Assembly (NCBI GenBank): GCA_004431415.1 | Contig: QPMI01000071.1 | Span: 248,001 to 312,000 of the forward strand | Length of the DNA: 64,000 bases | Reading direction: 5' to 3' | Origin: Cyanophora paradoxa CCMP329 | Taxonomy: Eukaryota; Plantae; Glaucophyta | Part shown: positions 29,307 through 51,109 of the stretch, piece by piece | Position numbering within the stretch: position 1 is the stretch's first letter | How the letters are laid out: each line of letters opens with the position of its first letter | Translations under genes and position numbers: made by a program | Notes under the pieces: generated by a model | Told to the model about the DNA's origin: nothing | What the model saw: the letters and a program-made list of their open reading frames with translations, nothing else | The model's database searches: none

Positions 29307-32300
29307 TTATATACTAAATAACGCACTGGAGACGGCGCGGCCGCCGGTATTTAGGTTGGCCATGGCCTCGTCGAGCGGGCCCGGCGGCTCCGCGGGGGCG
29401 GCGTGGTGCCCGCGGGACCCCGCCGAGACCAGCGCGGCCGCCGTCGCGGCGCGCCACTTGCGCTTCGCCTGCTGTGCAGACGTGGGGCCGGCCCCCCTGC
29501 GGCCCAACAAGTTAAGGAGAGATGTATGTTTGGAGTTGGGACTCGGGGCCGGGGCGCGCACCCGCTCCCTCTCCTGCCGAAGAGCCCCGTGGCGCTGCGA
29601 GAAGAGGAAACAAAGAAACTCACACAAAGCAAGATAGATAGAAAGATAGACAGGTAAGAAAGGCTCGCCTGGCGCGGCGCGGCTGGTTTCCGAGGAGCGG
29701 GCCATCCTCGCGATCCCCGTCCCACACGCCGTCCGCGCTGCCGATGGCCCCGACGCGCCCCGCCCCCGCCGCGCTCCCCGCCGCCCCGGCCCCGGACCCC
29801 TCCATCGTGACCTGCGCCATAGGATACGAAAGACAGAATCTCATTAGCTCTAAAATACGAATATATAACAAAAAGGACCTTTCTCAAGGATAAGAAAGAA
29901 AGATTCTCGTTAGGTCTTATTGGATTGTATAATAAAAAGCGTTAGAGGAGGACCTTTCCGAGGGCGAGCTGGGCGTAGTAGTCGCGGCGGGCGCGCTCCT
30001 CCTCCTGGATCCGCTCGTCCAGCCGGAACTGGCGGAGAGGAGGCGAGGTCAGTCAGGCCGGGGGCCCGGCGTGCACCCCCCCCCCCCCCTCCCCCCCCCC
30101 CTCCTCCACCGCGCCCCCGCCCACGCCCAGGGCCCCGCTGCTTCCCCGCCAATACCGCGCCCCCCGCCATGCCAAAGCGGGGCCGGCCCCCCTCGAACCC
30201 GGCCGCCGCCACCCCTCACCCCCGAACTTACACCATGACTCCGTCCCCCAACCCCCGAGCCCCCGACCCCCGCAGTGCCCCGGCCCCACTATCGCGCCCG
30301 GGCCTCGCGGATCCCCCGGCGCGGGGCGGGGGGCGCACGAGCTTGTGGCGGAAGGCGTCGGCGGTGCGGCGGTCGACGGCGCCGCTCTTGGAGGGGTCCC
30401 CCGGCCGGAACACGTTGATCACCGCCCCGATGAGGAGCAGCGAGAGCTGCCGGCGGCGGGGCAGGGCGGGGTGAGACGAAGCTCAAGATGAAGCTTATGA
30501 GAACTAGCTATAGATGCAGATCTATGGCTAGGTACGGAGAGGAGAGCCTCAAGAAAGAACAGAGGCAACGCGGAGGCGGCAGAGAGCAGAGCCTCAAGAA
30601 GAGAGGCGACGCGGGGGCGGCCTCGCGATCGGGACGATAAGATTCTATAGAGGCTCCTCTTGAGATTCTATAAATTATATAAGATTCTAAAGAGGCTCCT
30701 CTTGAGACTCCCAAGGGCCTGAGGGGCGCACGCCGACGATGGCGAGGACGAAGACCTTGAGGGCGGCCTCGAAGAGCCAGGCCACGGCGCCCGCCGTCGA
30801 GCCCCACGCGTACGCAATGAGCTGAGGGGGGCGGGGCGGGGCGCGGGTCAGTTTCGAGAGGAAAGGCGAAGGCGAGGCGCGCCGGCGAGGGAAGGCGCGA
30901 GCTAAGAGCGACGAGGCGGTGGGATTCCGCGACGTGGCGACGAGGCTTAAGGATTCAACGAGGCGGTACGCGTACGATCCCGCCATATGAGTGCTAGTAT
31001 GGGCGGCGGGGCTTTAATTTGGTACTTCGTTCGCCAACAGGAGACAGATAAGAGCACTAGTATGGGCGGCGGGGATTTACTAAGAATGTAAAAAAGCATT
31101 CGGGAATGGGCGGCGGGGCAGGGCGCGGCGGCGAGGCGGTGGGATTCCGCCATATGCGTACTAGTATGGGCGGCAATTCGGGAATGGGCGGCGGGGCGGA
31201 AGGGCGGGATTGCAAGCTTCGCTCGCCTGCAGGAGGGTGGGCCGCTTGTCGCGGCGGCTCCCGAGGGTCGGGTCCCACGCCCCCGCCTTCTTCCACGGCT
31301 TCTTCACCTGGGCGATCGCGAGCGGCGGTTTAGTATTTATTGGGCTCCCTCGATCCTAACACCGGGCTCTCTTAATGCCTAACACACCGGGCGCTTTTAT
31401 TGCTTCTATTCTAGGCCGCTCAGCAGAGAGGAAGGGGCGCACCGGACTCTTTTTGAAGAGAGACTTGCGGAGGGCGCGGATGTCGTCGCGCGCCAGCAGC
31501 TGCGTCGCGGCCCCGCGCAACCGCGTCAATCGAGGGCCGCGCTTGCGCTTAAGACTAAGGTGATAAGCGCGCTCAAGCTTATCACACGCGCAACCGCGCT
31601 AAGTTCCTCATGCACGGGGCGGGGCGGGTGAGGGGGGCGGGGGGGGGGGGGGGGGGAGGGGGGGGAGGGGGGGGGGGAGGGGGGGGGGAGGGGGGGGGAG
31701 GGGGGCGGGACATAATAAAGCCCGTTCTTAAATCAAAATCGTCTTCTAAGTTTAGAAGCTTTGCGGGGCGGAGCGGGGGGACCTGGACGGAGTGGAAGTT
31801 GAAGCGGCCGACGGGGAGGCAGCCCGGGTTGAAGAAGAAGGGCACCAGGATGCACACGATGACTGCCAGGCCGTCAGAAACGTCTCAGCGGAGGGCTTGG
31901 GAGTCCCTAGGCCGGGGGCCCAAGCCGGGCGCACTGAACATGTAGGCGTTCCAGAGGCCGCCGTGGCTGAGGGACATCTCCTGCAGCCGCGCCGCTGCAG
32001 GGGGGTCAGGCATGGGCGCGCGGGACCGAGGGACGGAGCCGGAGGGCTGCGCGCTGCAGAGCCGAAAGAGAGGAAGGCGGCGGCGCGATCCGCTTGGGCC
32101 CCGACCCCGCCGGCCCGCTAGCAGGTATACAAAGCCCGCCAACACGGCCAGCTAAAAGCTCGAGGCCCGAGCGCCGGCGGCGGGGGCCGGCATCGCCTAC
32201 ACGGCCAACTTCAGGCCCGGACGTCTAGAAGGCCCGCCTACACAGCTAAAAGCTCGAGGCCTACACAAGCACAGCGGACCGTGGTCGGCGAGCTCAAGGC

Positions 32301-35300
32301 GGATGTCGGGGTCCGCCGTGCGCGCGATGTCCGCCCTCACCGAGTCCCACATCTGAAGGCGGGGGGGCGGCGTGAGGGAGGGCGACGTGAGGGATGGGAT
32401 GGGATGGGATGGGATATGATGAGGGGCGGGCGTGAGGGACGGGCGGGGCGGGGCGGGGGGGTGGGATGGGCGGGGCGGGGCGGATGGGCGGATCGCGTGA
32501 GGCCGGCGGCGTGAGAACCAGACAGGACGGGACGGGGCGGAGGGATGGGATGGGGGGATGGCGTGAGGGCGGCGGCGTGAGGGGCGGCAGCGTAGGGATG
32601 GGCGGGGCGGGGCGGATAGATGGGAGGAAAGGTGGCGTGAGGGATGGGCGGGGCGGGCGGGGCGGATGGGACGGGACGGGATGGGGGCCGGACCGCGGGC
32701 ATGAGGAAGCCCTCCGAGGCGACCCTCGAGCCTGCGAACGAAGGAGGCGGAAGCGTAAGCTGAAGGCGTAAGCTTCTCTTCTATCTTATATCTAACTTAG
32801 CTCCACGCTCTTATATATCTTATCTCTTTGTATATTGAGCGCGGTGGAGCCCCCCGAAAGGGGCCGCGGCGTAAGCTGAAGGCTCCTCCGCGACGCGAGG
32901 CCCCGGTGGCCCGGGCTCCACATCTATCTATCTGAGCCCCATGACCTCTTTGCAAGTCATGATTATATGAGCTTCTCTCTGTTTAATGAGCGCGCGTGAG
33001 GCTCTACTACGACGCGTAGCCCCGGTCCGCTCGCTCAGTCTTCTCTTCTATCTTTTATAGCTAACTTAGCCCCACGGCCTCCGTTTAGCTTCTTTCTTCT
33101 TTCTATGTCAAGTGTGCGCGCGGACCGATGATGAGGGCGAGGAGGAAGAGGGCGTAGCGGAGGTGCCCCTCGTAGAAGGCGGCCACGAGGTCGGTCGCGG
33201 GGTCGTGCTGCAGCCCGAACCCGCGCCCCGACGGGATGTACCTGCCCGCCCCCGCCCCACCCCGGCGCGTCAGGTCGACGTCGCACGCTTAAACTTGCTT
33301 ATCGGGGTTGACGTTTCTGTAGCCTCTCGATCCTAAGAGATTCTAATCTTCTAGCATCAAGCTTAATTCTTTAGAGCGCACGCGGCGTTGGAGCGGAGGC
33401 CGTTGTAGAAGCCGACGGCGAAGGTGACGAGGTGGAACGAGTGGTACAGGCTCCTGCGGTCCATCCCGAAAAAGCGGCCGTGTGAGCGAGGCAGGGGCGG
33501 CTAGCGGCGCGCAGAGAATGTAGGGCCAAGGGCGCTCACAGCGCGACGAAGTCCCGGACGGTGGCCCAGAGGCCCAGCAGCGGCTTCTTCTGCACCAAAA
33601 TGTTCTCGAACAGGAGCGGCAGGGCCATCGGGAAGCCGACTGCGGCCGCGTCTCAGAAGAGATTCGATTTATACCGAAACGTCCGATCGATCCCGAATTA
33701 TTATATTCGAACCGTAAATGAAGGTGACGAGGTTGGCTGCGGTGGCGGGAGCGCGCACGCGCTGACGTCAGCTCTGGAACCGACGAACGGCTGAAATGTT
33801 CGAAATGTTCGGATTGGGAGGCTCACCCAGGTCGAAAGAGTTCGGGAGGACGATCCAGCGCGTGATCGGCTGCGCAAAAGGACGGGGCGCTCAGCTCGGC
33901 AGCTCGAAAGGCGGCCGACCTGCCCGGCGGAATCGCGTCGACGCGCGCACCTGGACGATCGACATGATGCAGCGAGAAAGGACGATGATGAGGACGCTGC
34001 GGGCGCGGTCAGATCCAATCCAGAAGCTCAAGCCCCACACGCGTTTCCGAGGTTCGTTATACCCATGACCAGCGCACCCATATCTGCGCAACGAGAAGCC
34101 ACGGAGTCAGATCCAACACGCAGCAGCGGAGATGCGAGTCGCGATCGAGGAACGCACTTGACGAAGAGGCCCTGGGTCAGGAAGTTCGTGACCGTCGTGT
34201 TGAACCTGCCGGCCGGCGGTATCAGACAGCAGAGACGCGCGGTGAAGGTGAAGCCCCCGAGGCTCGATGACGCCCCCGGCCACGGGGCCCAGCTAGCCCC
34301 CGGGCCCAACTAGCTTGCCCGAGTAGAGCAAAGCAGAGGAGTAGTAGTAGAGGAGTAGTAGAGCAAAGGCGTGGAGCAGGCTTGATGACGCCCCCGGCCC
34401 CCGGGCTCATGGCCAGCTAGAGCCACAAAGAGGGCGGGGCGCACAGGAAGGTCCGCTTGGTGAAGGAGATGTTGCCCGACACGAGGAGGTACCCGAACTC
34501 GCGCGCCATCGACTGCGCCATCGAAGTTATTAGTTTCCTTGGTGGATTTTACTGCAGAGAGGAGGCGGGGCCGTCGAACCATCTGGGCGGCGCCCTGCGA
34601 GATCTTCGACATGAACTTGTATGTCGTGAGCATCGACGTGTCTCGGGCCTGACAGAGATTACTCCACGATGAGACCGTGCTAAACGGGTTACGGCACCTT
34701 CCCGCCCTGCATGTACTCGACCTGGATGATGCGGCCGCCCGTCAGCTGCGCGTCGAAGCCCTTGAAGATGTCTGCGGGGGCGGGGCGTTCGGTCAAGGCA
34801 GGCGGGAGCGGACGCGGACGAAGGGAAGGAAACGGCGATGGGGCGGATGCGGACCCTCCGACACGTATTGGGTGTTCGACATGCCGCCGTTCGTGCGGAC
34901 GTAGGTGGCCTGGCCGCGGCGGCCGGTCAGCCTCTATAAAGGCGCGAGTGAAGCCGAGGAAACATAGGACGAGGCTACCTCGATGTAGTCGGGGTGCCCG
35001 TAGTGGTTTCTCACGCCAACCATGGCCAGCGCGCGCTGCGCGCCCCTCAGCGGAGCTCGCGAAGCGCAGAGATGCAGGGGCCTCGACCTGGGTGGCCGTC
35101 GTGAAGACGCGTTCCGAGACGCCGGACATGCGCGCGACGAGGTTCTGTGCGACGGAATTGGTGAGCAATTGATAAAAATCCGAGCGACGCGAACAGACGG
35201 ATCGAGCTGCGCGAGCGAGCGCACCCAGTCGGTGGTGATGACGAACTCGGGGAAGCCGATGATGCGGATCGAGCTGTCGTGCGTGAACTCCTCAAGCAGC

Positions 35301-38300
35301 GCCGGAACCTGACCACGAGCGATGTTAAGATAAGTCCGGATTTGATGATTCTTCTTCTACTTGATTTCACCTTGAGGGCCTCCTCGACGAAGAAGTCCTG
35401 GTTGCAATCGATGGCCTGGATGACCTGGTTCTCGCAGAAGATGAGCGCGTGGTTCTGCGGCCGCGACCAACGTCAACGGTGTGGAACACGACGGAGCAAG
35501 CCGATCCGCTTCGAGTCTCACCTGGTTCTCGCCCTTGGGGTACATGAGCATCGGGTCGCCGGCCATCTTCACGCGGCTGATCTCCTTCAGCGGCGGCGCC
35601 TCCGACGAGGGGCCCCGAGCGTTGTCCGCCAGCGGGTCGTACATGACGCGCACGCTCGAGTTCGAGCTCTTGTCGATGTAGACCAGCTCGAGCTGCGAAG
35701 AACAGCTCAGGAATGATATAGAAGGACGTAGATGCAGAAATAGAGATTATAGACAAACTGGTTAGACATCGATGAGATTAAGAGTACCAAACGAAGGTAT
35801 CTTCTTAGCAAACTAGTAGCAAAGAGCATGTGTCTTCTTACCTTCGGGAAGCGCTTGAGGATGCCGCAGACGTCGTTGTACTTGAGCCGGTTGTCGAGGG
35901 CCTTGGTCTTCGCGTCGCCCGCCTTGCGCCGGTCCTCGGCGCTCTCCGCCAGGCGCCCGCCCTGCGCCCGCAGCTGCCGCACCTCCTCGCCCTGCCAGAC
36001 ACGCCGTCAGCTTTAGGGCCTGAAGTTAACGGCCCGTCGCTCTTCCATCCCATCGAAGCCGTCACGAGTACTCTTCCATCTTATCGAAGTTATTCATCTT
36101 CTTCCTTTCATTGATTTTACCTTGGTCTTCTCCAGGCTGGCGAGGGAGCCGGCGCCGGCGAGGAGGGCCGCGCGGACCTCCGCCGCCTTCAGCTTGAAGT
36201 CCGTCAGCGTCTTCCCTGCGGCATGGATCAGGAAACCAAAGCGGCTCGACCGCGTCGAAAACCGAGCTAGCGTCCGAGTCTTGCTAGCATCCGCGTCCGG
36301 CCGCGTCCGAGTCTTGCTAGCATTGTCGCCGATTGTCGCCTATGAGCTATAAGGTTGCAGAGCCCAAAGGTCAGGCCTATAGCTAGGCTTCGCCGAGTGC
36401 GGTTCGGCCACGTTACAGAATCCAGAGACCAGGCTCGCCCAAGACACGGAAACCCAGGGCCTGTCGAGGAAATTGCGCACCCCAGGAGGCCCAGGCAGTG
36501 AAGATGGCCTTCTCGTCGTCGGAGAGCGGCTGCCGCGCCCGCTGCTTCGCCACCAGGTCGTCCACCAGCGCCAGGTCGTCCGCCGCCTAACACAAAGCTC
36601 AGAAACCTTAAAGATGCGATAGAATGGAAAATAGGCTGGAAAAGATGCGATGGAATGTTCAGATGTAACACAAAGTTCAGAAGCTTGAAAAGATGGGATG
36701 GAATGGCGATGTAGTTTAAGCTCAAAGAGTTGGAAGCTTAGGAGTTGAAGCCTTCAAAGATGGGATGGAATGGCGCACGGTGATCCGGTCCTGGAAGTTC
36801 TGGTAGGCGAAGATGACCTGGACCTTGGATGCCACGAGGGCGTCCCGCTCCCGCTGCCGCTTCTCCCGCGCCGCCGCGTCCTGTTTATATACTCCCATCA
36901 GCTCCAAAAACTTCGAAGTTCGGATGGAGCGCGCACCTGGTGGGCGGCGGTCATGTGGCCGTGGCGCTCGCGGTCCAGCCGGGTACGCAAGATGGCCGCC
37001 TCCGTCGTCGCAGGCTGCACCGAACCAGGTCAGAGTTAGAAATGGGCTGAGAAGACGGGTTCGGTCCAACTACCTGATCGGCGTCGAGGGGCGCAGGCTC
37101 GTCGGGATCGTCGTAGACGGTCGGGTAGTGCATCCGCGCCAGCAGGTCATACGCCTGCGAAGTAAACGGAAAGGTTAAATTCTATTAGAGAAAGTTAGGA
37201 ACAGTTTTGTTTGGTTATAAGGACCTTGAAGTAGGAGCAGATGCCGAAGAGCGTGCGGGCGAGGGGCTGGAAGCGCATGCTGGCCCACCAGCGGATGGCG
37301 AGCTGGTCGTCCGCCGTGAGGTCGTTCCAGCAGAGCAGCACCTCGCCTGAGGGCGACATGGTTAGCAAAACCAAACACCATAATCTAATACGGCTTGAAA
37401 CGTTAAATATTTATAGGCGATGGCCTCCGAGCTTGGACTCTCTATCCTTTTCGTCTGTCTTCTAGCTCATCTCACCTCTGAGCTTGGACTCGGAGAGGCG
37501 GCGGAGGGCCTCGAGGGCGGCGGCGTCACGGCGCGGGCGCGCCGGCGCGGCAAAGGGGTTGCGGGTCGTCATCTTGTTCGCCTCGCGCTGCTCGTCGTCC
37601 GCCCGCCGCTGATGGGAACCGGAGTTAGCTTGCTGCCAACATCGACAGTAAACGACGACGCTAGTTTATAAGCATAGAAGTTAATAAGAAAGCTCTAAAA
37701 GAGTCAGTTTATAAGGATAGAAGTTTATAAGACCTGGAGCTCGTCGACGAGTATGGTCCACTCGTTGGGGTGCATGTCGATGATGTGCTCGAGCCTGCAC
37801 GTCGGACGCACAAGTGAGCGGCGCCGGAGTCGCATCGCGTGCGCTACAGCATCCAGCATCCGACGCACGCGCAGATGCCGGACGCCTGCGCTCAAATCAG
37901 TAAGAGAAGGGCACAGAAACGGGAAATTAAAGCCAAACAACGCACGTCGGTCTCGAGGAGGTCCCGCTCCGCGTAGATGACGGCCTCGTCTCCGGCCGGG
38001 ATCAGCACTGTCAGCGACCTTGCCTGCAAGACGTTAAGCGACGTTAATAAGACGTTAATAACAATAAAGGCAGCGCTCGTTATGGCGTTAAGTGAAGAAG
38101 CGACTTTAAGGAAAGGGGCGAACCTGGCGGAGCGAGGCGCTGTCGGGCAGGTCGTTCATCAGGAGGCCGGACGCCCAGACGTGGATCCTGCGCTCGTTCG
38201 GTGAGCGACAGTCCGCGTCGGATCCATTTAACAGCGCCGCAATCAAAAGCTGGAGCACGGCCCGCACCGGCGGCGGGCCTCGGCGTTCTCTGGCCCCGTC

Positions 38301-41300: not shown

Positions 41301-44300
41301 CCGCACCGCTTCGAGACAATGGCGTGCGCCCGCATCCTGAGAATCGAACGCACGATCAGCTAAAGCGCCGCAAACAAAAAACAGCGAGGGGACCAAACTA
41401 AGCCAAACTAAAGCGATTAGCTTGAGCGCCAATGAAGCTTGAAAATCACTTAGATCTAGAGGAAGGTGGCTATGATAAAACACTTTGGGATGCTCAAGGA
41501 CCTGACCAAACCAATCCAAGCCAAACTAAAGCGATTCACGCACCAGGCGTCCATGTGGACGTACTCGAGGCGGCGGGCGATGGCGGCGTCGCGGGCCGCG
41601 TCGTCGCCCCCGAGGGAGCCCAGGCCCTCCCCCCAGCTCCGGTTCCCGCTGCGAGAGAGGAGTGAGAAAATATTCAAGGGCAGAGGCGAGACGACCGCGC
41701 GATTGACGTTTTACGCGGTCTAACTTGGCTACAGTTTGCCCTATATCTCTTTAAAAATTGCTCGGAGTCATTTATTTATTGCGGACCTGTACTTGGTCGC
41801 GTCAAGCACGAAGCGCGGCAGCTCGTACAGCTCCGTCAGGTCCGAGTACGTCCTGCGTCAATGAATTCAGAGATTGAAATATAATAAGCTTAAGCTTCAA
41901 GTTTGATTCTGTGTATTTGTCGTTATTGTTGCTGTTCACGCACATGTAATCCTGCTGGCTTCGCGTGTTGGCGCGGAACATCTTGGCGCAGGAGAAGACG
42001 CGGTGCCAATACGAGACCTCCAGCTTGACGTATGCCCCCGGCGGCATCTTCCGCTCCCGGACCTGCACGTCACGATTTTACGCTTAGATTTAGCTTTATG
42101 CACTCTTTGGTGCTTTACTCTTTCTTAAGCTCTCTTAGTTGCCCGCGTACCTCGCCGGCGCTGTTCTGCACGATGGCCAGCAGGCGCTTGGCGGCGTAGA
42201 AGAGGTACGAGAGAAAGGAGGGGCAGCTCCTGAAGTTGGAGGCGGAGACGAAGACCAGGTCGCACAGGTACAGGTTCACCTGCGACGATGATAATAGTAA
42301 TTAGTAATAAGTGAATATCAGCTTCAGCATAAGCTTAAGGTTAAAGCACAAGCTTAAGCTCAAAGAGGTTCACCAGCATGGCGTTCAGCTGCTCGTCGTC
42401 GATGGCTGCCTCCGCGTCGGCCGCGCCGGCACCGGCGGCCGCGCCCCGCCGGCCGCCGCGGCGCCACGCCTTGACGATGGAAATGAAGGCGTACTTGGCG
42501 AAGGTGGGGACGTGGAAGAGGGCGCTGGTGAGGCCGCGCCCGAGCATGCGGACGAAGCGGCTCCAGATGGAGAGCGCCCCGGGGAGCGCGCTGCGTCGGA
42601 CATCGGTAAGATTAAGGCACAGTTCGTTGAGCTTAACTCTAGTAACACTCAAGACTAAATTAAACGCACAAGCTCATCCTGTAGAACCACTCGCGGTTGG
42701 CGTGGAGCTTGCGGTTGTGCAGCTCGAGGACGGCCCGCCCCTCGAAGTCGCCCTGCCGGTCCTGCACAGAAATTCACCTCAGCGAAAGAAACAAGCAGAA
42801 GGAACTCAACTATAGCAGTTGTTGTTGTGCGCTAATGCAAATCGTCTTATAACTTAACGAAAGCTCAAGAAAGCGCACCCTGGCGCCCTCGACGGCGTCG
42901 GTGACCTCCTTCATGACGAGGCGGGCCGCCTGCTGCTGCACGTCCGCCGAGAAACCTAACCGAAGGAGAAAAATAGACGAGGTTATCGAAGGTGAAACCG
43001 ACGAGGCTTCACGGGTGAGTGAGGCCGTCCGTCCGGCTCGCACCGGTGACTTCGTCGAGGTGCTTGATGACGGCCTGCAGCTTGTAGAGCACGCCGTCCT
43101 CGGGCCCGAAGACGGGGATCCCGTTCACCTGGTCGAAGAGATTTCAGCGCGCGTTTCACGTACGAAAATTAGCGGAATTCGAAGATGCCAGTTAATACGG
43201 GGATGCCATTCACCTCGGCGCGGGCGGAGGGCGCCGGCTTCGGCCGCGCGGGGAGCTGGTACGGAGCGGGCGACGGCGGCCGCGGCGAGGCCGCCGGCGT
43301 CCTGTGAGAGTTGCCGCCGCCGTTCGTGACGGCCGTCGGCACTTGCAGAAGCGCGCCCGAGCCGGCCGGCGCCGACTTCGCCTTGGGTAGCACCGGCAGC
43401 CCGGCGCCGGCGGCCGCGGTCGAGGCGATGGAACGGGCGGACGGGGGCGGCTGGCCGTCCTCGCTCCAGAGGGCGCCCAGGTCCCGAGGCTTCTCGAGGA
43501 TCGTCTTCGTCTTCTCGTCCAGGCGGCGCATGCGGGACTTCATCTCGGAGAGCGACAGGTGCCGCTTGATGCCGTCGCCGACGTCGTTGCTCCCGATGCT
43601 CTCGTCCGCCGACTCCGCCGAGTGCGTCTCGGAGGACGAGTCGTCGCTCGCGTCGTCGGCCGCGGCGTCGCCGTCGCGCCGGCGCATCTGCAGAACGACG
43701 TGCGAACCGCTGGCGGCGCCGGGCGACGGCGGCGGCGCGACGCCGTCGGCCGCCTTCAGCGGCTGCATTTCCTCCTCGTCCTGGTCGCCCCGGCGGCCGG
43801 CGCGTACTTTGCGGTTCGGCGCGGCGGAAATCTTGCGAAGCTCCGCGGCGGAGACCTGACGGGCGTCAAGTCAGATCTGTGCGGGCGGGCGGCGTCAATT
43901 TAAGGAGAAGACTCGCCTCCAGGTCTTCACGCTCGAGCCAGCGGCGGTTGCGGCGCTTCTCCTGGCGCTCTTGCTTCAGATCTGCGGGGCGGACATGAGG
44001 TGAGACGAGCTTCCTTCAAAGCCGGGAATTCGAAGATTTCGGGAGGAAAGCTTGCTCGCCCATGTAGAGGAACACGAGGAACACGGTCGTGAAGATTATG
44101 ATGAGGCCGCAGACTACAACCGGCGGGATCCAGGGGAGACCTGCAAACAAGGCCGATTACTCGACGCGTGACGGTAATGCAGGAAATTGAACAAGCTCTT
44201 TTTACCCTTGCGCGTTTCAGGTGGCCGGTACAGCTCAGGGAAGGTGTCATACAGGATCTCAGGGTCGTCTGTGTGATTCGAATCAACAAAACTTGAGAGA

Positions 44301-47300
44301 AAGATGGCAATATCCAGTTATCGATGCGCACCTGTGACATCCAGGATGTCCACGGCGACGGCGGCCCCAGAGTCCTGCGACAGCCGCCTCCCTCCTCCTG
44401 CGCCGGCCGCGGGCGCCGGCGCGGCCGATCGGAGCTGCAGACGGGCCCCGGACGTGTGCGCCACTTTTAGGCGCCACGAGACTTCGGCGGCCGACACCGT
44501 CGACTCGCTTTGGTCCTCCTTGATCAGCGCCAGAACCTGAAAACATTATTATAAGAAAAGCGTTGCGTAAACCATTGGGTTGAATTCAAGAAGCGAACCT
44601 CCTGCGACGTCTGCCACGAGACGATGCGAGTGGCGTTGGGAAGGGATCCGAAGCTCGCCCCGAGCGCCCGCTGGAAGCGGTCCTTGGACGCTTTCGGGCC
44701 GAGGACGAACATGACCGTGTTGCCGGCGCTGCCCCGCCGGACGCCCAGGAGGGTATCCCCGAAGCTGTAGTTCTGGATCGCGCGCCAGTCCGGAAGCACG
44801 CGCGCGTAGACGAAGTCGCCCCCGTGCACGGACGCAGGCTCCAGGTCCGGCCGCAGAAGCAGCTTGTAGTCCGTCCAGGACTCCGGGAACGCGCCGAACA
44901 GGTCGTCCGTGAAGAGAACCAGCGCCCGAATCGCGTCGCGGATCCAGACGGCCGAGACGCTCGGGACGGGACGGGCGTCCACGCCCGTCTCGACGTCGCC
45001 GAGCTCGGTGCTGCAGAACGGGACGGGCGTCGACGCGTCCCGCAGCAGGCTCGCGATCTGGCCGGCGAGGAACTCCGTCGCAAGGGAAGGGACGCTGTCG
45101 GAGCGCGAGAGCTGGAGCGCCGGCGAGGCGAGCGAGAAGGACAGCGCGTAGTGACGGGACGGATTCGCTGTGGCGAAACGAAAGTTAAACATCAATAAGA
45201 GCGCGTATCCCGCTCGTTTGTCACTCACCTCGGCAGACGCATCGGACGTCCTCCTTGCGGTCCTTGACGGGGTCCTGCCCCTCGAACCGGACGTACTTCT
45301 CGAGCGACAGCTCCATGCCGTCGGGGCAGTCTGGGTAGTGCCGGAAGCACGGCATCTTTCCCTTGGACAGGCAGACGGTGTTGGAAGCGACCCGCCGGGC
45401 CTCGCCGGCCGTGGGGGCGCCGAGGTAGCGGTGCAGTCCCTTCGGGCACGTCCGCGCCGCCGACGGGTCGCGGGGCGCGCAGGCGCCGTACCCGCCGATG
45501 CCGTCCGACCCCTCGAAGTTGTAGTAGCCGCTGGTGCGCGGGCACTCGCAGAAGGTACTGCCCGCGTGCAGCTTGCACTTCTTCGGCTCGGGCAGCTGCG
45601 GGCCGAGGCCGCTCGCCCTGTAGTCGTAGCAGGGAACGGCCTTCTCCCTCGACACGACGCCGATCTTGGCCGGCGGCGACCACGGCCCGCCGCAGACGGA
45701 GACGCTGGCCCGGACCACGCCGAGCTCGGACAGACCCATAGACTGCAGAAAAGAATGTTAGAATCCGAAAGCCCGAGACAACAAGCACATATTTCATTGA
45801 AAACTGACCTTTCCGAAATCCTTGAGGACGCCGACCACGCCCGGATCGTCCGTGCGGCACTGGAGGAAGCGGTACGCCCCCTCCATTCCGCTCTGCGGCC
45901 GGTTGTATGTAAGCTTGAGCCCCGAATAGAAGATGTGAAGCTTAAGCAAGCTTTCAAGATAATAAGTTTCCAGTTCAAATAGAGCGCACGGCGGTGACGA
46001 CGCAGGTGGGGCTCAGGCGGAGGATCCGCCCGTCCTTCTGCACGTCCACCGAGAGCCGAACGGCGTTCTGCAGGGATGAAAGAAAGCTTAGGGATTAGAT
46101 AGATAGCAAGATTAGGTATTTAGATATTTAGAAGTTTATATCAGAAAGCGTAGGGATGAGAATCCAGAAAGCAAAGCGTAGCACCTGCTCGGCGCTCGGG
46201 GAGAAGCCCGTCCCGAGGATGCCGATCGAGTAGGTCGCCGAGACAGGGAAGACGAGGTCCGTCTCCTGCAGCGAGACCGCCTCACCTGAAACGGAGTACA
46301 ACAGTTAGAAACGACGCGAAAGAAAGAGAACTATAGAAGTTTGGTAGCTATAGAACAAGAGAACAGAAGTTTTATAGAAGAGACGCGGAAGAGAACAAGT
46401 TTGGTAGCTATAGAAGCTTAGCGCACCGGATGCCAGGCAGTCGGCCCCCGGTTTTCTGTTGGAAAGGGGCACGTGCACGAAGTCGTGGACGATGAGCGGG
46501 CCGCCGGTGATGGTCCGCTCCGTCCCGCCGACCGCCACCTCGGCCGGCGCCGTCGAGGACTGCGGCTCCTGTCCCCCCCACATCCTGCGCGCCGCACAGA
46601 TTAGCGTTGGGTCTCTTAGTGCAGATTCGGGTTTGACGCATGCGCACCAGATGTTGATGCGGACGCGGTTGTGGCGGGGCCACGGCGTGCTCGCCGTCGA
46701 CTTCCACTTCGAGACGAGCCGCGGCTGCGCCGACTCGGCGTTGATCTCGCCCACGGGCACCACGCCCTTGTACGCCCAGAATTGGACCTGAAATCAACTT
46801 AGATTGAAAAAAGCAAGATTATCAAGCTTCAGCGTTGGAAAGGTCGCACCCCGTCGGGACCCCAAAGGAAGGCGGCTGTGACTTTCTTGTCCGGCGTCCA
46901 CTGCGCGTCCGTCTGGAAGAGGTCGCGCACGCGGTAGCGCTGCAGGTTGCCTGCGGAACGTCCGAATCAGCGACGGTAAAGCACGAAAGTGCCCGGCCGG
47001 ATTCGAACCTGGGGGCTCGAAGGGCATGACGACGAACTGCGCGTCGGAGGAGTCGCCCTCCTCGAAGGCGCCGAACTTGCCGAACTCGAGATCGATCTCG
47101 CGGTACGGCCCTGGCAAGGGTTTCAGCATTACTATTTGAGCCGATGATAATTAGAACAGAATGGTAAGAAAAGGGGCGAACATTCAGCGACGCCCGGCTC
47201 GATCCATGTACCCTGTGCAAGCGAATGGCATTAGTTGAAGAACGCCAAAAAGCGTTCAGAAGGCAAATGTGTATATAAGTAAATAACGCAAAAGACCGCC

Positions 47301-50275
47301 ATTAGCTTAAAGAACGCAAGCCTTTAGAAGACCAATGCTTATAAAATTCATTATAAGCACCTCCTCCTCGTAGACGTAGAGGCCCATGATGAGGTTCGGG
47401 TCGAGCGCCGGCAGCACGTGCGCCGCCTCGTTCACGACGAAGTAGTAGAGGCCGTAGTAGCTAAAACAGATAGAGAAATCAACATGATAATAAAGCAGAT
47501 AGAATGAAGCCGAGAAACCTGGGCGCACAAGTACTCGTCGGTGACCATCTCGGTCGCCCACCACTTGCCGTTGCGCTTGTTGATGTTCAGGTGGAAGCCG
47601 TCCGGCCGGAGCCGCACGTCGCGGGGGTCCCCGCTCCAGAAGTTGGGCCTGCACGACACGTAATAATAAGCAAAATGGGCGCGGGCGGATCGGATATAGA
47701 TACGGACCCCGGCTGGGCCGTGAACGGCTGGTCGGCCACGTCCGTCCGCTTCGGGAACCACCCGATGCACTTCCAAGGGACGAACGAGCGCTCGAGCACA
47801 AGCATCTGGACGGCGTAGGGCTGCAGGTTCTGCAGCCGGTTCGGGAAGCGCTCGGCGCTGCCGGTCGCGCCGCGGATGAACTGTGCGAGCCGGTCGAGCC
47901 GCTTGTTCTGGAGGAGGACGACGACGAGCTGCGTGGAGCCAGCGATGGCGGCGTGGCTGCCGGGCTCGACTCGGATGGCGCGGGCGCTGACGGGCCCGCA
48001 CGCCTCGAGGACGGGGCGCGCAGGCTCCGCCACCAGCTCCCAGAACTCCCCGCGCGAGAAGACGTACAGCGTGCACTCCGCGAGCTCCGCGCCGCACTGC
48101 TCCTCGGCGCGCCGGAGCGATCCGGTGCCGTTGACGTAGTACGCCGAGACGCCGTCGTCGCCGAGTCCGCCGCCGGGCGGGTCGAGCCGCAGGCACATCG
48201 GCACGAGCCGCTCGTGCCCCGCCTGCGCGTTGGCGTCGTACACAGCCGACTGCGCCCACAGGACAGCCTGGCGAAGCATAAGTAAGGAACAACGGACAGC
48301 GGGGGGCTGCGTATCAAGCGACTAACTTTGCGGGACGCGATGGCTTCCTCGGCGAGGAATGGCGGAATGGAAGGGAGGCCGTCCACGAAGTGCTCGGGGC
48401 CCGAGGCCGGCACGACGAACGCGGCCAGGCGCGCCCCGGCCGTGCCGTTGAGGCGGGGGGCGAAGGGCGGGACGGAGAATTCGCCGCCGGGCTCGATGCG
48501 GGCGGAGGGCGCGGCGGGCGTGGGGAGCCCGGCCCAGCCCGCGACCGCGCCGAAGAGGGAGAGGCGGCATCCCGCGAAGTTCGAGCCGCACGGGCCTTGG
48601 TCCGTCAAGCCGTCCAGCGCGACCCGCCCAACCTGCAACACGGGCGTTTAGATAGACGCTGAAAGGCTCTCAAACTAGATAGATTAGATCTTAAGTAAGA
48701 TAGATTAGCTATTTTAGCTTCGAACGAGACGCACGATAGGGTCGACAAAGGGGAAGATCGGAACGAAGAGTTCGATGGGGGACGCGCTGCCCGAGGTGGA
48801 GCTGCACTGGGGTCCGCCGAGGGGCGGCTCGGGGAACAGGGGCGAAAGGGGGGCCCGCGGCCGGTACGCGTAGCGGACGGAGACCGTCGTCGCCAGCGCG
48901 CTCGCCTGCGGCGAACGAAGCCCGCCGAGTTGCGCCCAGAAGAAGAAGATCGAGTATTAATACTAAAAAGCGTATATACCACAACGGTGGAGCGGTTCTC
49001 CGCGACGATGGAATCAAACTCCAGGCCGGATGCGAAGAACGCCTCGCTTCGCCGAAAGGATCAGCTCCCAGAGGTCATGTGAGCGATCATACTAAGCATG
49101 CTTCGTTCACACCTGATCAGGCGCGGGTCGGCGGCACCTCGGGGGGCGTCCGGGTCCACCAGGCCCGAATAGAGAGCGACAGAGATCTGCGCCGCAGCCG
49201 GTCGCGAACTTAGCGGGAGGCGGCGGCGGCGGCGACGACGACGACTAGCAAAAGCAAGTGGGGCAGGGGCAGGGGAAAGGAGGGCGGGGGGAAGGGGAAG
49301 GGGGGGGGAAGGAGGAGGGGAGGGGGGGAAGGGGGAGGGGGGGGAGGGGGAGGGGGGGCGGGCGGTGGCAGCCTAGCTGTAGCTAAAAGAGCGGGGGCCG
49401 GGGGGCGAGGCGTTAGCTAGAGAGGGGCCGCATATGCGAGACGGTACCCCCTTCGCCAGCTGGGACGGGGACCGGGCGGGCGGGCGGGGAGTGGAGAGAG
49501 GCCCAGGGAGGGGAGAGATCTCGGGGGGGGGGGGGGGGGGAGGGGGGCGGGGGGGGGGGGCGGGCGGGGGAGGAGGAGGAGGAAGAAGAAGAAAGTGAGA
49601 GAGGAAGAAAGGGAATCTAGCTATAGATAGAAGAGCGGGGGCCACCGGGCGGGGCGTTAGCTAGGGTGGGCCGGGGGCGGCGCACGCGAGACGGCAGCCA
49701 GCTGAAGAACGCTGTGAACTCGACCGCGTCCGGGTTGCGCCGGAACGCGTTGCGCTCGCCCGTCCGCACTGTGCACGCGAACGCCGTCGCCCCGTCGCTG
49801 CCCGTGACGGCCGTCGAGCGCTCCAAGACGATCTCGCTGTTGGTGCGGTCCTTGCCGCCCCCGAGTCCGCGCACGCTGCGCGAACAGTTCGCGTTAGCTA
49901 TGCTGCGGCCGCGAAGCGGGGGCGCGCGGCGGCGGCGGCGGAAGCGGCGCACAGGATGTGAGCGTTCGAAGGGCAGTCACTCTGACTGGCGGAGGAGGCC
50001 GAGACAGCGAGGATGACCTTCTGCGCGGACTCAAAGCGCTCGACGGTCCGTAGCTGGAGCACGTGCGTCCCGTAGCCGGCCGGCGCGCCCTTGGGGAACG
50101 ACACGCGGGCCGCCTCGTTGCCGCGGCCGACCACCTGCTCCCACGCCCACTCCTCGGCGGCGCTGGCAATTGCAAGCTGCGCCACGAACAGGAGGCCGAC
50201 GAAGAGCGCGATCCGCGTTTCGCGCCTGCATGCGCGGCTGAAGGCGCGCGCGCGCGAGCGTGAGACCATATGCAT
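29307..50275 (-). CDS. Gene B: GH16-GT48 fusion (signal peptide - extracellular domains - GH16 - Cys-rich - TM - FKS1 domain 1 - 1,3-beta-glucan/callose synthase)
   Basis: Start MHMVSRS..IALFVGLLFVAQLAIASA (ATG 50275/50269). In-frame splicing was traced by hand from GH16 through the TM into the FKS1 N-terminal region. Probable stop at 29307 (SALFSI*). The 3' exons (29.3-33 kb) are approximate. Confidence 0.75.
33140..38340 (-). CDS. GT48 1,3-beta-glucan synthase core of gene B
   Basis: FKS/CalS motifs in the expected order: PENAEARRR, SLTVLIP, HPNEW, RWWASMRFQPLARTLFG, SKVQVIFAYQ, EISRVKMAGDPML..KGENQ|NHALIF, QAIDCNQDFFVEEALK, LLEEF..IIGFPEFV, RNHYGHPD, GGMS..VSEDIFKGF, VEYMQGGKARD, KISQG, GFPMALPLL, YIPSGRGF. 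Confidence 0.93.
42150..43128 (-). CDS. FKS1 domain 1-like region of gene B
   Basis: LDEVTGFSADVQQQ (cf. FGFQxDN) and NLYLCDLVFVSASNFRSCPSFLSYLFY (cf. LYLLIWGEAANLRFMPECLCYIY). Confidence 0.65.
46460..47790 (-). CDS. GH16 glycoside hydrolase domain of gene B
   Basis: QPGPNFWS..DVRLRPDGFHLNINKRNGKWWATEM..YYGLYYF..LDPNLIMGLYVY..REIDLEFGKFG (ExDxE at 47099-47085)..AQFVVMP..GN..VRINIWMW. Confidence 0.85.
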
Positions 50276-51109
50276 ATGACGTAGCCGCCGGGCCGGCTGC
50301 GGGCAGGGATCGGAATCACAGAACACAACGAGCGCACGTCGCATATCTTGTTGCATGCAGTCGTGCATGCGAGATCCCTATGCTGATCATGATGCATAAG
50401 AGTCCCTCCTCCGCTGTTCTCGCCGCTGAGCTGCGTATATATGTCCGACGGTTTATAGCTATCGCCTACATATGCATGCCGCAGTGCTGCTGCAGACCGT
50501 GCAGACAGTGCGCGTGCTAGGCCTCATGTACTATGCATACAGTGTGCGAGGGTACTACGACTCCACAACCGCGCAACAAGTGAATCGACTCGGCGATATC
50601 GTACCGTACTGCGCCGTCCTGCGCCGTAGTGCGAAGACTCTTGAACTTCGGAAGAGCACGAGCTCGCCGGCTGCTTGAAGGCTTTCTGCGATGCTGGGCC
50701 GTGCGATGCTACGCGCGGCGGCTGAAACGTTGAACGCGGCGACTGAGACGCCCTACCGTAGTACCTGGTATGTCAATTAGCTAGTACTGGCTACTATAGC
50801 TACTGGCGCAGTGGGCTACTAAAGGCTACTCCCGGGCCCCGGCGTCTCGAGCTCCCGCGCCGCGGCCCGCGGCCCGCGGGGCCCGCGGGGGGGGGGGCCC
50901 CGGGGACCCCGGGGGACTCGGGGGGAGTCCCGCCCGCCGGGCGGCCGGGGCCGAACTGGCCCAGTGGGCAAGCTCACTGATCATGAGTCAGTGAAGTCAA
51001 CTTAAGCTTGCCAAGTTGGCAAGCTTTAAAGAAAGAAGTTCGAAGCCTTGAATCATTGAATTCATGATTCGTCAAGCCGCAACCGCCTCTGCGCAATTCA
51101 AGCCAAGGT

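What the first reader, a model, noticed from the sequence alone, without database searches (positions are those of the whole stretch)
29307..50275. Single polypeptide joining an extracellular GH16 glucanase/transglycosylase to an FKS/callose-type GT48 beta-1,3-glucan synthase
Seen: signal peptide, intact GH16 ExDxE motif, Cys-rich region, one TM helix (WIPPVVVCGLIIIFTTVFLVFLYM) followed by a basic stretch (KQERQEKRRNRR), a low-complexity linker, FKS1 domain 1 and a full GT48 core. All lie on one strand and are joinable in frame by short introns. Known: fungal Fks and plant CalS proteins begin with a cytosolic N-terminus and carry no hydrolase. GH16 enzymes act on beta-glucans, and fungal alpha-glucan synthases (Ags1/Mok1) set a precedent for an extracellular GH fused to an intracellular GT. 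Inference: a one-chain 'polymerise, export and remodel' machine in which GH16 trims, cross-links or sets the length of the emerging glucan. I do not know of a described GH16-GT48 fusion but cannot search to confirm novelty.
Basis: partly seen in the sequence, partly recalled or inferred. Interest (0 to 1): 0.9.

Follow-up and report, generated by a model that had tools for sequence, protein, structure and literature searches.

The report
Glucanase-like domain fused to glucan synthase
The alga Cyanophora paradoxa transcribes one very long gene that puts an outward-facing GH16 glucanase/transglycosylase-type domain and a GT48 beta-1,3-glucan synthase on the same membrane protein. This is a natural fusion of a sugar-polymer maker with a likely remodeller, a pairing so far shown as two separate proteins in yeast and only asserted as a fusion for oomycetes.

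Summary

**One gene, one transcript.**
- The window is from Cyanophora paradoxa. The public gene model tig00000269_g23721.t1 (3150 aa, P0001) maps exactly to the minus strand, 50390-33106, in about 79 exons.
- Spliced transcript contigs from three RNA-like runs (two studies) run without a break from above 48000 to below 42149. They cross the GH16 exons, the TM helix, the linker and the first synthase exons in one open frame. None of these splice joints is in the DNA run.

**The GH16 call.**
- It fails every direct HMM test.
- It is nevertheless real. The segment belongs to a widespread prokaryotic GH16-like subfamily with an invariant E-I-D-x-E-F motif.
- A profile of that subfamily hits solved GH16 lichenases at 2e-10.
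- An AlphaFold model (pLDDT 83) matches only GH16 structures among its top 50 hits.

**The GT48 part.** It passes Pfam (256 bits) and aligns to yeast Fks1 residues 704-1486. The model then stops about 390 residues early, and the stretch 33105-29307 is unverified.

**Mechanism and novelty.**
- The "polymerise, export, remodel" mechanism is inference only.
- Novelty is partial. A 2026 paper describes a yeast GH16-GT48 complex and states that oomycetes have such a fusion. I found no description for Cyanophora or any other Archaeplastida.
- The scan had not noted this gene before on other DNA.

The parts
50338..50390 (-). First coding exon of the public model P0001 (ATG at 50390).
   Evidence: Exact mapping of P0001 to the window. 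RNA contig X1 has 459 nt more upstream of this ATG.
50156..50212 (-). Signal-peptide-like hydrophobic segment (P0001 residues 27-45, IALFVGLLFVAQLAIASAA). It follows a basic n-region.
   Evidence: Kyte-Doolittle mean 2.33 over 19 residues. No dedicated signal-peptide predictor was available.
47797..50237 (-). Exons for the N-terminal ectodomain (residues 19-454), of unknown fold. Residues 185-295 faintly resemble a domain of about 115 aa that precedes the GH16-like domain in some bacterial homologues.
   Evidence: Pfam and NCBIfam are blank. The local HMM gives only 6.3 bits.
46470..47796 (-). GH16-family domain (P0001 residues 455-720) spread over 8 exons.
   Evidence: tblastn to PGAP-annotated GH16 proteins at 4e-10 and 1e-7. 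139 prokaryotic relatives. The A3 profile hits GH16 lichenases at 2.1e-10. AF2 model pLDDT 82.7, with all top 50 PDB fold hits GH16.
47085..47099 (-). Catalytic motif E572-I-D574-L-E576 (followed by F577).
   Evidence: Found. The E, I, D, E and F columns are invariant in 61 aligned family members and align with the EIDIEF motif of 1BYH/1MAC.
45229..45742 (-). Cys-rich exon (residues 823-993).
   Evidence: The exon is bounded by RNA joints. 15 Cys in residues 720-1000. No family match.
44595..45167 (-). Orphan ectodomain exon (residues 994-1184).
   Evidence: phmmer against 1.84 billion representatives finds only P0001 itself.
44061..44132 (-). Single transmembrane helix (WIPPVVVCGLIIIFTTVFLVFLYM).
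   Evidence: Kyte-Doolittle 2.83. It lies in the RNA-supported exon 44060-44138.
43209..43981 (-). Basic stop-transfer stretch (KQERQEKRRNRR) and charged low-complexity cytosolic linker (about residues 1300-1540). It covers two exons joined to the TM exon by a GC-AG intron.
   Evidence: RNA joints 43981/44060 and 43854/43916. The frame stays open.
39087..43123 (-). Exons for the Fks-type N-terminal cytosolic region and first TM cluster (residues about 1542-2218). They include a weak FKS1_dom1 match.
   Evidence: P0001 mapping. FKS1_dom1 E 0.041, 14.6 bits against a cut-off of 27. Hydrophobic peaks at residues 2110-2246. Exons down to 42149 are RNA-supported.
33106..39086 (-). GT48 catalytic region and following TM helices (residues 2219-3150), equivalent to yeast Fks1 residues 704-1486.
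   Evidence: Pfam PF02364 at 7.9e-76, 256 bits. PDB Fks1/Gsc2 at 1e-49, with the NQNHALIF, D-NQD, HYGHPD, EDIF-G and GK-RD motifs aligned.
29307..33105 (-). It is unverified and could be 3' UTR plus a repeat, further GT48 exons, or another gene.
   Evidence: No significant GT48 C-terminal match. There are only weak colinear motif matches at 31862-31783 (PFFFNP) and 30821-30732. Codon-usage-positive segments are present.

Best explanation
This is one real, transcribed Cyanophora paradoxa gene. It encodes a protein of about 3150 residues or more.

**Predicted layout.**
- A signal peptide takes about 1270 residues to the exoplasmic side. That ectodomain holds a domain of unknown fold, a GH16-family beta-jelly-roll domain with an intact E-x-D-x-E catalytic motif, a Cys-rich module and an orphan domain.
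- A single TM helix with a basic stop-transfer stretch returns the chain to the cytosol.
- A disordered linker then leads into a divergent Fks/CalS-type GT48 beta-1,3-glucan synthase.

**Shown:** the single spliced transcript and open frame, the GH16 fold and motif, and GT48 family membership.

**Inferred:**
- The GT48 part polymerises UDP-glucose into a beta-1,3-glucan and extrudes it.
- The tethered GH16 domain then cuts or, more likely, transglycosylates that glucan. It may branch it or link it to another surface polymer close to where it emerges.
- This would match the separate GH16 partner Ghs2 of Bgs3 in fission yeast and the extracellular domain of the alpha-glucan synthase Ags1.
For: **Transcript.**
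- Contigs of 10342, 9202 and 7660 nt from runs X1, X3 and X2 (two studies) carry 24 canonical splice joints across 48000-42149. None of these joints is in DNA run X8.
- The joined exons form one open frame through the TM helix and linker.

**Independent gene model.** P0001 (EukProt, Cyanophora paradoxa) maps exactly to 50390-33106.

**GH16.**
- tblastn hits annotated GH16 proteins at 4e-10.
- Pairwise E-values are 1e-17 and 7e-15, with the motif aligned.
- The E-I-D-x-E-F motif is invariant in 61 sequences.
- The family profile hits lichenases 1BYH/1MAC at 2e-10.
- The model has pLDDT 82.7 and pTM 0.82, and all top 50 fold hits are GH16.
- Language-model neighbours are all GH16.

**GT48.** PF02364 scores 256 bits. 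Fks1 and Gsc2 match at 1e-49 with catalytic-region motifs conserved.

**Precedent.** A Ghs2(GH16)-Bgs3(GT48) complex makes branched glucan in S. pombe (PMC13612389).
Against: - Pfam PF00722 does not detect GH16 in this protein.
- The GH16 motif type and best structural matches are lichenase-like. Lichenases cut beta-1,4 bonds next to beta-1,3 bonds, not pure beta-1,3-glucan.
- The GH16 domain is about 550 residues from the membrane anchor, so action right at the channel exit is not implied.
- P0001 lacks the last ~390 residues of an Fks-type synthase, and no clear C-terminal exons were found. The synthase may be incompletely modelled or truncated.
- The papers I searched describe no beta-1,3-glucan in Cyanophora.
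- Contigs cannot exclude an additional internal promoter or proteolytic separation of the two halves.
Confidence: 0.62

Rival explanations
1. These are two neighbouring genes, a secreted or anchored GH16 protein and a separate GT48 synthase. The joining comes only from read-through or from chimeric assembly and gene prediction.
For: Contigs cannot show transcript starts or ends, and the tool warns that a contig across two genes shows no single transcript. In run X2 the assembly is broken between 45742 and 46424.
Against: - The junction is made of spliced exons, not intergenic DNA: TM exon 44060-44138, then 43916-43981, then 43209-43854.
- These exons keep one frame with no stop for 967 codons.
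- The same joints appear in three runs from two studies.
- The public ab initio/evidence model predicts the same chain.
- The break in X2 lies inside the ectodomain, not at the proposed boundary.
Confidence: 0.07
2. The fusion is real, but the GH16 domain does not act on the synthase's own beta-1,3-glucan. It cleaves or transglycosylates another polymer (mixed-linkage glucan, another surface glycan, or prey/bacterial glycan), or it serves as a carbohydrate-binding anchor.
For: - The motif is the non-bulged EIDxEF type.
- The nine best fold and profile matches are 1,3-1,4-beta-glucanases.
- Crh5 and xyloglucanase NXG1 are also among the fold hits.
- About 550 residues separate the domain from the membrane.
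- The prokaryotic relatives are small secreted or lipoprotein-type proteins with no GT48 partner.
Against: - The catalytic E, D and E are invariant, which argues against a pure lectin role.
- Covalent linkage to a glucan synthase is most simply explained by a shared substrate.
- In yeast the GH16 partner Ghs2 works on Bgs3-dependent glucan (PMC13612389).
Confidence: 0.22
3. The synthase half is a decaying or non-functional GT48, truncated after the equivalent of Fks1 residue 1486. In that case the expressed protein is in effect a membrane-anchored GH16 ectoenzyme with a vestigial tail.
For: - P0001 stops 45 residues after the GRGF motif.
- RNA contigs extend only about 455-553 nt past that stop.
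- The HMM of GT48 C-termini finds nothing in 33100-29000.
- The nearest GT48 relatives are only about 30% identical.
Against: - About 1600 residues of GT48-type sequence remain open across more than 50 exons, with catalytic-region motifs conserved and coding-type codon usage.
- A GT donor sits at 33125, exactly where coding signal ends.
- A PFFFNP motif lies downstream in the right order.
- The contigs end inside or near a low-complexity repeat, where assemblies commonly break.
Confidence: 0.09

Closest known systems
Fungal Fks1/Gsc2/Bgs and plant CalS/GSL beta-1,3-glucan synthases (CAZy GT48)
   Same: The Pfam Glucan_synthase domain is present. The protein aligns to Fks1 residues 704-1486 with conserved catalytic-region motifs. 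It has a cytosolic N-terminal region, then a TM cluster, a cytosolic GT domain and further TM helices.
   Different: - A signal peptide, an ectodomain of about 1270 residues and an extra TM helix precede the synthase. Fks and CalS proteins start in the cytosol.
- Identity is only about 30%.
- FKS1_dom1 is below threshold.
- The C-terminal ~390 residues are missing from the model.
S. pombe Ghs2 (GH16)-Bgs3 (GT48) synthase-remodeller module (PMC13612389, 2026)
   Same: A GH16 domain on the exoplasmic side is physically coupled to a GT48 synthase. The proposed logic, synthesis tightly coupled to remodelling or branching, is the same.
   Different: - The yeast module is two polypeptides that bind each other, whereas here there is one chain.
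- The Cyanophora GH16 belongs to a prokaryote-type, lichenase-like subfamily that Pfam PF00722 does not detect.
- No functional data exist for Cyanophora.
Oomycete GT48-GH16 single polypeptide, as stated in the discussion of PMC13612389 (citing Judelson 2017 and Morris 2009)
   Same: The same two CAZy families on one chain, if the statement is correct.
   Different: - That paper calls the architecture restricted to oomycetes, but Cyanophora is a glaucophyte (Archaeplastida).
- I could not verify the oomycete case. Morris 2009 does not mention it in the text or held supplements, and Judelson 2017 is not held.
- The one oomycete relative retrieved (P0003, Hyaloperonospora) is a GT48-MFS transporter fusion with no GH16.
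- Domain order and homology therefore cannot be compared.
Fungal alpha-1,3-glucan synthase Ags1/Mok1 (extracellular GH13-type domain + intracellular GT5 + multipass region)
   Same: The design principle is the same: an N-terminal exoplasmic glycoside hydrolase/transglycosylase domain, a TM helix, a cytosolic synthase and a multipass exporter on one chain (general knowledge; also cited in PMC13612389).
   Different: The enzyme families are unrelated (GH13/GT5 against GH16/GT48) and the polymer is alpha-glucan. This is an analogy only.
Bacterial GH16 lichenases (1,3-1,4-beta-glucanases; PDB 1BYH/2AYH, 1MAC, 1GBG, 3O5S) and the uncharacterised prokaryotic GH16-like subfamily (loci L004-L083)
   Same: Both share the beta-jelly-roll fold and the EIDIEF-type catalytic strand. 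Identity to the prokaryotic subfamily is 25-38% over about 220 residues.
   Different: - Identity to solved lichenases is only 14-18%.
- The subfamily has no characterised member that I could find.
- Prokaryotic members are small secreted or lipoprotein-type proteins, some with an N-terminal domain of about 115 aa, and are never attached to a synthase.

Membership tests
CAZy GH16 (clan GH-B) | Beta-jelly-roll (concanavalin-like) fold | tested here: met
   The AF2 model of residues 455-720, built with a 61-sequence alignment, has pLDDT 82.7 and pTM 0.82. All top 50 Foldseek PDB hits are GH16 enzymes, with probability 1.00, E down to 1.1e-9 and target-normalised TM up to 0.69.
CAZy GH16 (clan GH-B) | Catalytic E-x-D-x(0,1)-x-E motif on one beta-strand | tested here: met
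   E572-I-D574-L-E576 is present. The E, I, D, E and F columns are invariant in 61 family members and align with the EIDIEF of 1BYH/1MAC.
CAZy GH16 (clan GH-B) | Significant sequence or profile similarity to recognised GH16 members | tested here: met
   tblastn hits PGAP 'glycoside hydrolase family 16 protein' entries at 4e-10 and 1e-7. The A3 profile hits 13 PDB GH16 chains, the best at 2.1e-10. 13 of 61 family members individually hit PF00722.
CAZy GH16 (clan GH-B) | Pfam PF00722 above the gathering score on the protein itself | tested here: not met
   No family is reported for P0001 or for residues 455-720 or 500-780, even at E up to 10. NCBIfam, PHROGs and PDB phmmer are also blank.
CAZy GH16 (clan GH-B) | Retaining endo-glycanase or transglycosylase activity | not testable with these tools
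   This needs the recombinant domain and oligosaccharide assays.
CAZy GT48 (Fks/CalS beta-1,3-glucan synthase) | Glucan_synthase domain (PF02364) above the gathering score | tested here: met
   256.3 bits against a cut-off of 37.2, E 7.9e-76.
CAZy GT48 (Fks/CalS beta-1,3-glucan synthase) | Conserved cytosolic catalytic-region motifs aligned to solved Fks1 | tested here: met
   phmmer hits Fks1/Gsc2 chains at 1e-49. The NQNHALIF, ID-NQD, HYGHPD, EDIF/Y-G, Q-GK-RD and GRGF motifs are aligned.
CAZy GT48 (Fks/CalS beta-1,3-glucan synthase) | FKS1_dom1 (PF14288) N-terminal cytosolic domain | tested here: inconclusive
   E 0.041 and 14.6 bits against a cut-off of 27, at P0001 residues about 1700-1793.
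CAZy GT48 (Fks/CalS beta-1,3-glucan synthase) | Complete C-terminal TM bundle (Fks1 residues about 1487-1876) | tested here: inconclusive
   P0001 ends at the equivalent of Fks1 residue 1486. The HMM and blastx searches of 33100-29000 give nothing significant. Only weak colinear motifs appear.
Single-chain exoplasmic GH + cytosolic GT polysaccharide synthase (Ags1-like design) | Both modules on one translated chain, separated by a TM helix, with GH outside and GT inside | tested here: met
   One spliced open frame runs across GH16, the TM helix, the linker and GT48. Orientation is inferred from the signal-like N-terminus and the basic residues after the TM helix. No experimental topology is available.

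The most novel reading that the evidence does not exclude
A glaucophyte independently fused a prokaryote-type GH16 ectoenzyme to a GT48 glucan synthase. In this reading the two act in cis as a single-chain synthase-remodeller.
- This would be a natural 'Rosetta stone' for the yeast Ghs2-Bgs3 module.
- It would contradict the published statement that such fusions are confined to oomycetes.
- It would imply that the wall-less flagellate Cyanophora makes and remodels an extracellular beta-glucan, perhaps at division or in a cyst or mucilage layer, that has not been described.
Probability: 0.4. Interest if true: 0.75.

Novelty: new variant of a known kind. Interest (0 to 1): 0.6.

Why it matters
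How cells couple making a wall polymer to branching and cross-linking it is an open question. In 2026 fission yeast was shown to pair a GH16 protein with one GT48 synthase.

- **Independent evidence for the pairing.** A covalent fusion of the same two families, in a lineage as distant as glaucophytes, suggests the pairing is functional and recurrent.
- **A defined test object.** One chain carries a catalytic E572/D574/E576 triad and a synthase, so cis coupling can be tested directly.
- **An unstudied GH16 subfamily.** The work also exposes a large, uncharacterised prokaryotic GH16-like subfamily that standard HMMs largely miss.
- **A possible unknown polymer.** It points to an unstudied beta-glucan in Cyanophora.

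The value is tempered in three ways: nothing about activity is shown, a similar fusion is already asserted for oomycetes, and the synthase's C-terminus is unresolved.

Tried and rejected
**Searches that came back blank or weak**
- Pfam on single ORF pieces gave only two weak Glucan_synthase hits.
- Brute-force exon enumeration for 48000-46424 timed out twice. I replaced it by mapping the public protein.
- PDB phmmer, Pfam, NCBIfam and PHROGs on the GH16 segment were all blank.
- The word-indexed homologue search was blank for the GH16 segment as a short protein and as a region of the long protein. It also missed bacterial relatives that exist at pairwise E 1e-29. These blanks therefore say little about fused relatives elsewhere.
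- Single-sequence AlphaFold gave pLDDT 30 and was unusable.
- The ESM Atlas search on residues 720-1275 gave no usable hit.
- The look-up of encoding contigs has no record of P0001.

**Attempts to extend the gene to 29307**
- tblastn and blastx with GT48 C-termini, an HMM of C-termini against all ORF pieces of the window, and a codon-usage and splice-site dynamic programme gave only sub-significant, colinear motif matches.
- The first dynamic-programme run started in the wrong frame and is discarded.

**Checking the oomycete fusion claim**
- Morris 2009 does not mention it in the text or held supplements.
- Judelson 2017 is not held.
- The stramenopile storage-glucan paper mentions no fusion.

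- I did not use complex prediction, because no protein-protein binding claim is made.
- I sent no joined spliced model to any search tool. Searches used exon references or the public protein P0001 by id. Exons were joined only in memory inside scripts, to check the reading frame.
Full report
**What is there**

The window has about 60% G+C and is eukaryotic, with many short introns.
- the TM helix at 44132-44061;
- the basic stretch from 43976;
- the EIDLE motif at 47099-47085.

A phmmer search of one ectodomain exon (window:44596-45165:-) against 1.84 billion representative proteins returned a single hit, P0001. It is 3150 aa long and 100% identical to the query over its residues 995-1184. P0001 is EukProt EP00741_Cyanophora_paradoxa_P024568, gene tig00000269_g23721.t1, and is a singleton cluster. 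So the organism is the glaucophyte Cyanophora paradoxa. An earlier follow-up in this scan reached the same organism on another piece of the genome.

P0001 maps exactly to 50390-33106 on the minus strand in about 79 exons. For the 76 introns I could place exactly:
- lengths are 49-201 nt, apart from one of 831 nt;
- 74 are GT-AG and 2 are GC-AG.

**Is it one transcript?**

Seven runs labelled as probable RNA hold about half of the sampled words of 41000-49000. DNA runs hold up to 97%.

I laid three RNA-like runs and one DNA run on 42001-48000:
- Each of X1, X3 and X2 gives a long contig (10342, 9202 and 7660 nt).
- X1 and X3 follow the minus-strand exons from 48000 to 42149. X2's long contig covers 45742 to 42149, and a second X2 contig covers 46424-48000.
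- There are 24 joints, of which 15 are listed.
- The listed joints read CT..AC on the plus strand, either as printed or at an equally fitting cut, so they are canonical GT-AG on the minus strand. Two exceptions are 43982-44059, which is GC-AG, and 43855-43915, whose ends are ambiguous.
- None of the joints is in DNA run X8. That also shows X1-X3 are cDNA.

Joining the RNA-defined exons from 46067 to 42149 gives one 967-codon frame with no stop. It runs through the Cys-rich module, the orphan domain, the TM helix, the basic stretch, the linker and the first synthase exons.

The RNA form differs from P0001 at one point only. It uses an alternative donor at 42373 with the same acceptor, which removes 8 residues.

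By length arithmetic, contig X1 is 459 nt of 5' sequence, then the P0001 coding sequence, then about 455 nt of 3' sequence. X3 has about 553 nt at the 3' end.

The contigs give no sign of this, but contigs cannot exclude an extra internal start.

The joined model was translated only inside scripts. Searches used exon references or the public protein by id.

**Is the N-terminal module GH16?**

Direct tests fail:
- Pfam, NCBIfam and PHROGs give nothing.
- phmmer against PDB sequences gives nothing.
- The word-indexed homologue search gives nothing.
- A single-sequence fold was useless, at pLDDT 30.

Other evidence overturns it:
1. Language-model neighbours in the ESM Atlas are all GH16 clusters, with a top score of 0.90.
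2. tblastn against plasmids hits genes annotated "glycoside hydrolase family 16 protein" in Priestia filamentosa (4e-10) and Chondrinema litorale (1e-7). Identity is 26% over about 190 residues, and REIDLEF pairs with REIDIEF and EEIDIEF.
3. A scan of one genome per prokaryotic species found 139 relatives at 25-38% identity across many phyla.
4. In a 61-sequence alignment with the Cyanophora segment first, W467, E572, I573, D574, E576, F577 and N680 are invariant.
5. The alignment's profile hits 13 solved GH16 chains, all 1,3-1,4-beta-glucanases or engineered forms of them, the best at 2.1e-10. A three-sequence profile already gave 2.8e-6.
6. 13 of the 61 members individually match PF00722. 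The Cyanophora segment does not.
7. With this alignment AlphaFold gives pLDDT 82.7 and pTM 0.82. All 50 best Foldseek PDB matches are GH16 enzymes: lichenases first, then laminarinases, the Crh5 transglycosylase and the xyloglucanase NXG1.

The domain covers P0001 residues 455-720 (window 47796-46470). It is a divergent GH16 member with an intact catalytic strand. The motif is the non-bulged E-x-D-x-E type, which from general knowledge of GH16 is typical of lichenases, XTHs and Crh enzymes rather than laminarinases.

**The rest of the ectodomain**
- Residues 46-454 and 721-1273 have no family match.
- Residues 994-1184 have no relative at all in the representative library.
- Residues 720-1000 hold 15 cysteines.
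- Residues 185-295 faintly resemble a domain of about 115 aa that precedes the GH16-like domain in some bacterial homologues. The score is only 6.3 bits, so this is a lead and not a finding.

**The synthase**
- PF02364 scores 256 bits.
- Fks1 and Gsc2 chains match at 1e-49 over Fks1 residues 704-1486. The NQNHALIF, ID-NQD, HYGHPD, EDIF-G, GK-RD and GRGF motifs are conserved.
- FKS1_dom1 is sub-threshold.
- The nearest relatives are only about 30% identical: an unnamed 1810-aa protein, a Hyaloperonospora GT48-MFS fusion, and plant callose synthase 9. None carries a GH16 Pfam domain.

P0001 stops 45 residues after GRGF, about 390 residues short of Fks1. Downstream, in 33105-29307:
- There are codon-usage-positive segments.
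- A GT donor sits at 33125, exactly where the coding signal ends.
- A PFFFNP motif lies at 31862-31783, where the conserved PF-FNP motif of GT48 would be expected.
- No match is significant, and an HMM of GT48 C-termini finds nothing there.
- The RNA contigs end either within or just before the low-complexity repeat at 32796-32200, or after about 500 nt of further exons. I cannot tell which.

The 3' end is therefore unresolved.

**How it most likely works**

Shown:
- one chain;
- a signal-like N-terminus;
- a GH16 fold with the catalytic triad;
- one strongly hydrophobic helix followed by K/R-rich sequence;
- a charged linker;
- a GT48 domain.

Inferred:
- Topology is type I. The ectodomain is outside, or in the lumen of a secretory compartment. 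The chain enters the cytosol where an Fks-type N-terminus normally starts.
- GT48 makes and extrudes beta-1,3-glucan.
- The tethered GH16 hydrolyses or transglycosylates it nearby.

The lichenase/XTH/Crh-like motif and the long spacer make a cross-linking or branching role, possibly on a second polymer, at least as likely as simple trimming.

**Comparison and novelty**
- The closest functional precedent is the Ghs2(GH16)-Bgs3(GT48) complex of fission yeast (PMC13612389).
- The design analogue is Ags1.
[quoted passage not shown] I could not verify this at its sources.
- No held paper links Cyanophora with GT48, callose synthase or this gene.

The protein sequence is public but undescribed. I class it as a new variant of a known kind: the same family pairing, as a covalent fusion, in a new lineage, with a GH16 module from a different and largely unrecognised subfamily.

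**Limits**
- The blanks for fused relatives come from a word-indexed search. That search also missed clear bacterial homologues, so they do not show the fusion is unique.
- Only prokaryotic genomes were scanned for the GH16 subfamily, so no direction of transfer can be inferred.

Noticed in passing
Loci L004-L083 (e.g. L004:1444-2109, L013:1417-2088, L018:1423-2106): There is a large prokaryotic family of GH16-like domains of about 200-250 aa, with 139 hits in species-representative genomes across many bacterial phyla and a few archaea. It has an invariant W...REIDIEF...N signature. Only 13 of 61 sampled members are recognised by Pfam PF00722. Many members start with signal or lipoprotein-type N-termini.
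   Followed up: partly
L005, L011, L022, L033, L056 and others, upstream of the GH16-like domain; window about 49000-48330 (P0001 residues 185-295): About 15 of the bacterial homologues carry a conserved N-terminal domain of about 115 aa (IEFTYVPPYGS...GWWTKP). The Cyanophora ectodomain shows a faint match to it (6.3 bits), which hints that a two-domain bacterial-type unit was incorporated.
   Followed up: partly
P0003 (Hyaloperonospora arabidopsidis, 2468 aa): An oomycete GT48 protein has precomputed Pfam sugar-transporter/MFS domains (PF00083, PF07690) on the same chain. This is a different GT48 fusion (synthase plus transporter) from the GH16 fusion asserted in the literature.
   Followed up: no
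window 49187-50017 (-) and 32200-32796 (-): There are two long proline/serine-coding low-complexity repeat tracts. The first forms the only long intron (831 nt) of the public model. The second lies just past the model's stop, where the RNA contigs appear to break.
   Followed up: partly
window 42280-42373 (-): The RNA contigs use a donor 24 nt upstream of the one in the public model, with the same acceptor. This gives a protein 8 residues shorter, so it is either an alternative splice form or an annotation error.
   Followed up: yes
window 8139-11525 (-), 14503-16005 (-), 18500-21589 (-), 62428-63972 (+): The flanks hold very long uninterrupted ORFs (501-1129 codons) with coding-type codon usage, and two of them match fibronectin type III. 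They are probably parts of the giant FN3 surface proteins that other readers noted in this genome.
   Followed up: partly
L002 (Chondrinema litorale plasmid): The bacterial GH16-like gene sits between a DNRLRE-domain protein and a beta-N-acetylhexosaminidase. This is a possible clue to the subfamily's substrate.
   Followed up: no
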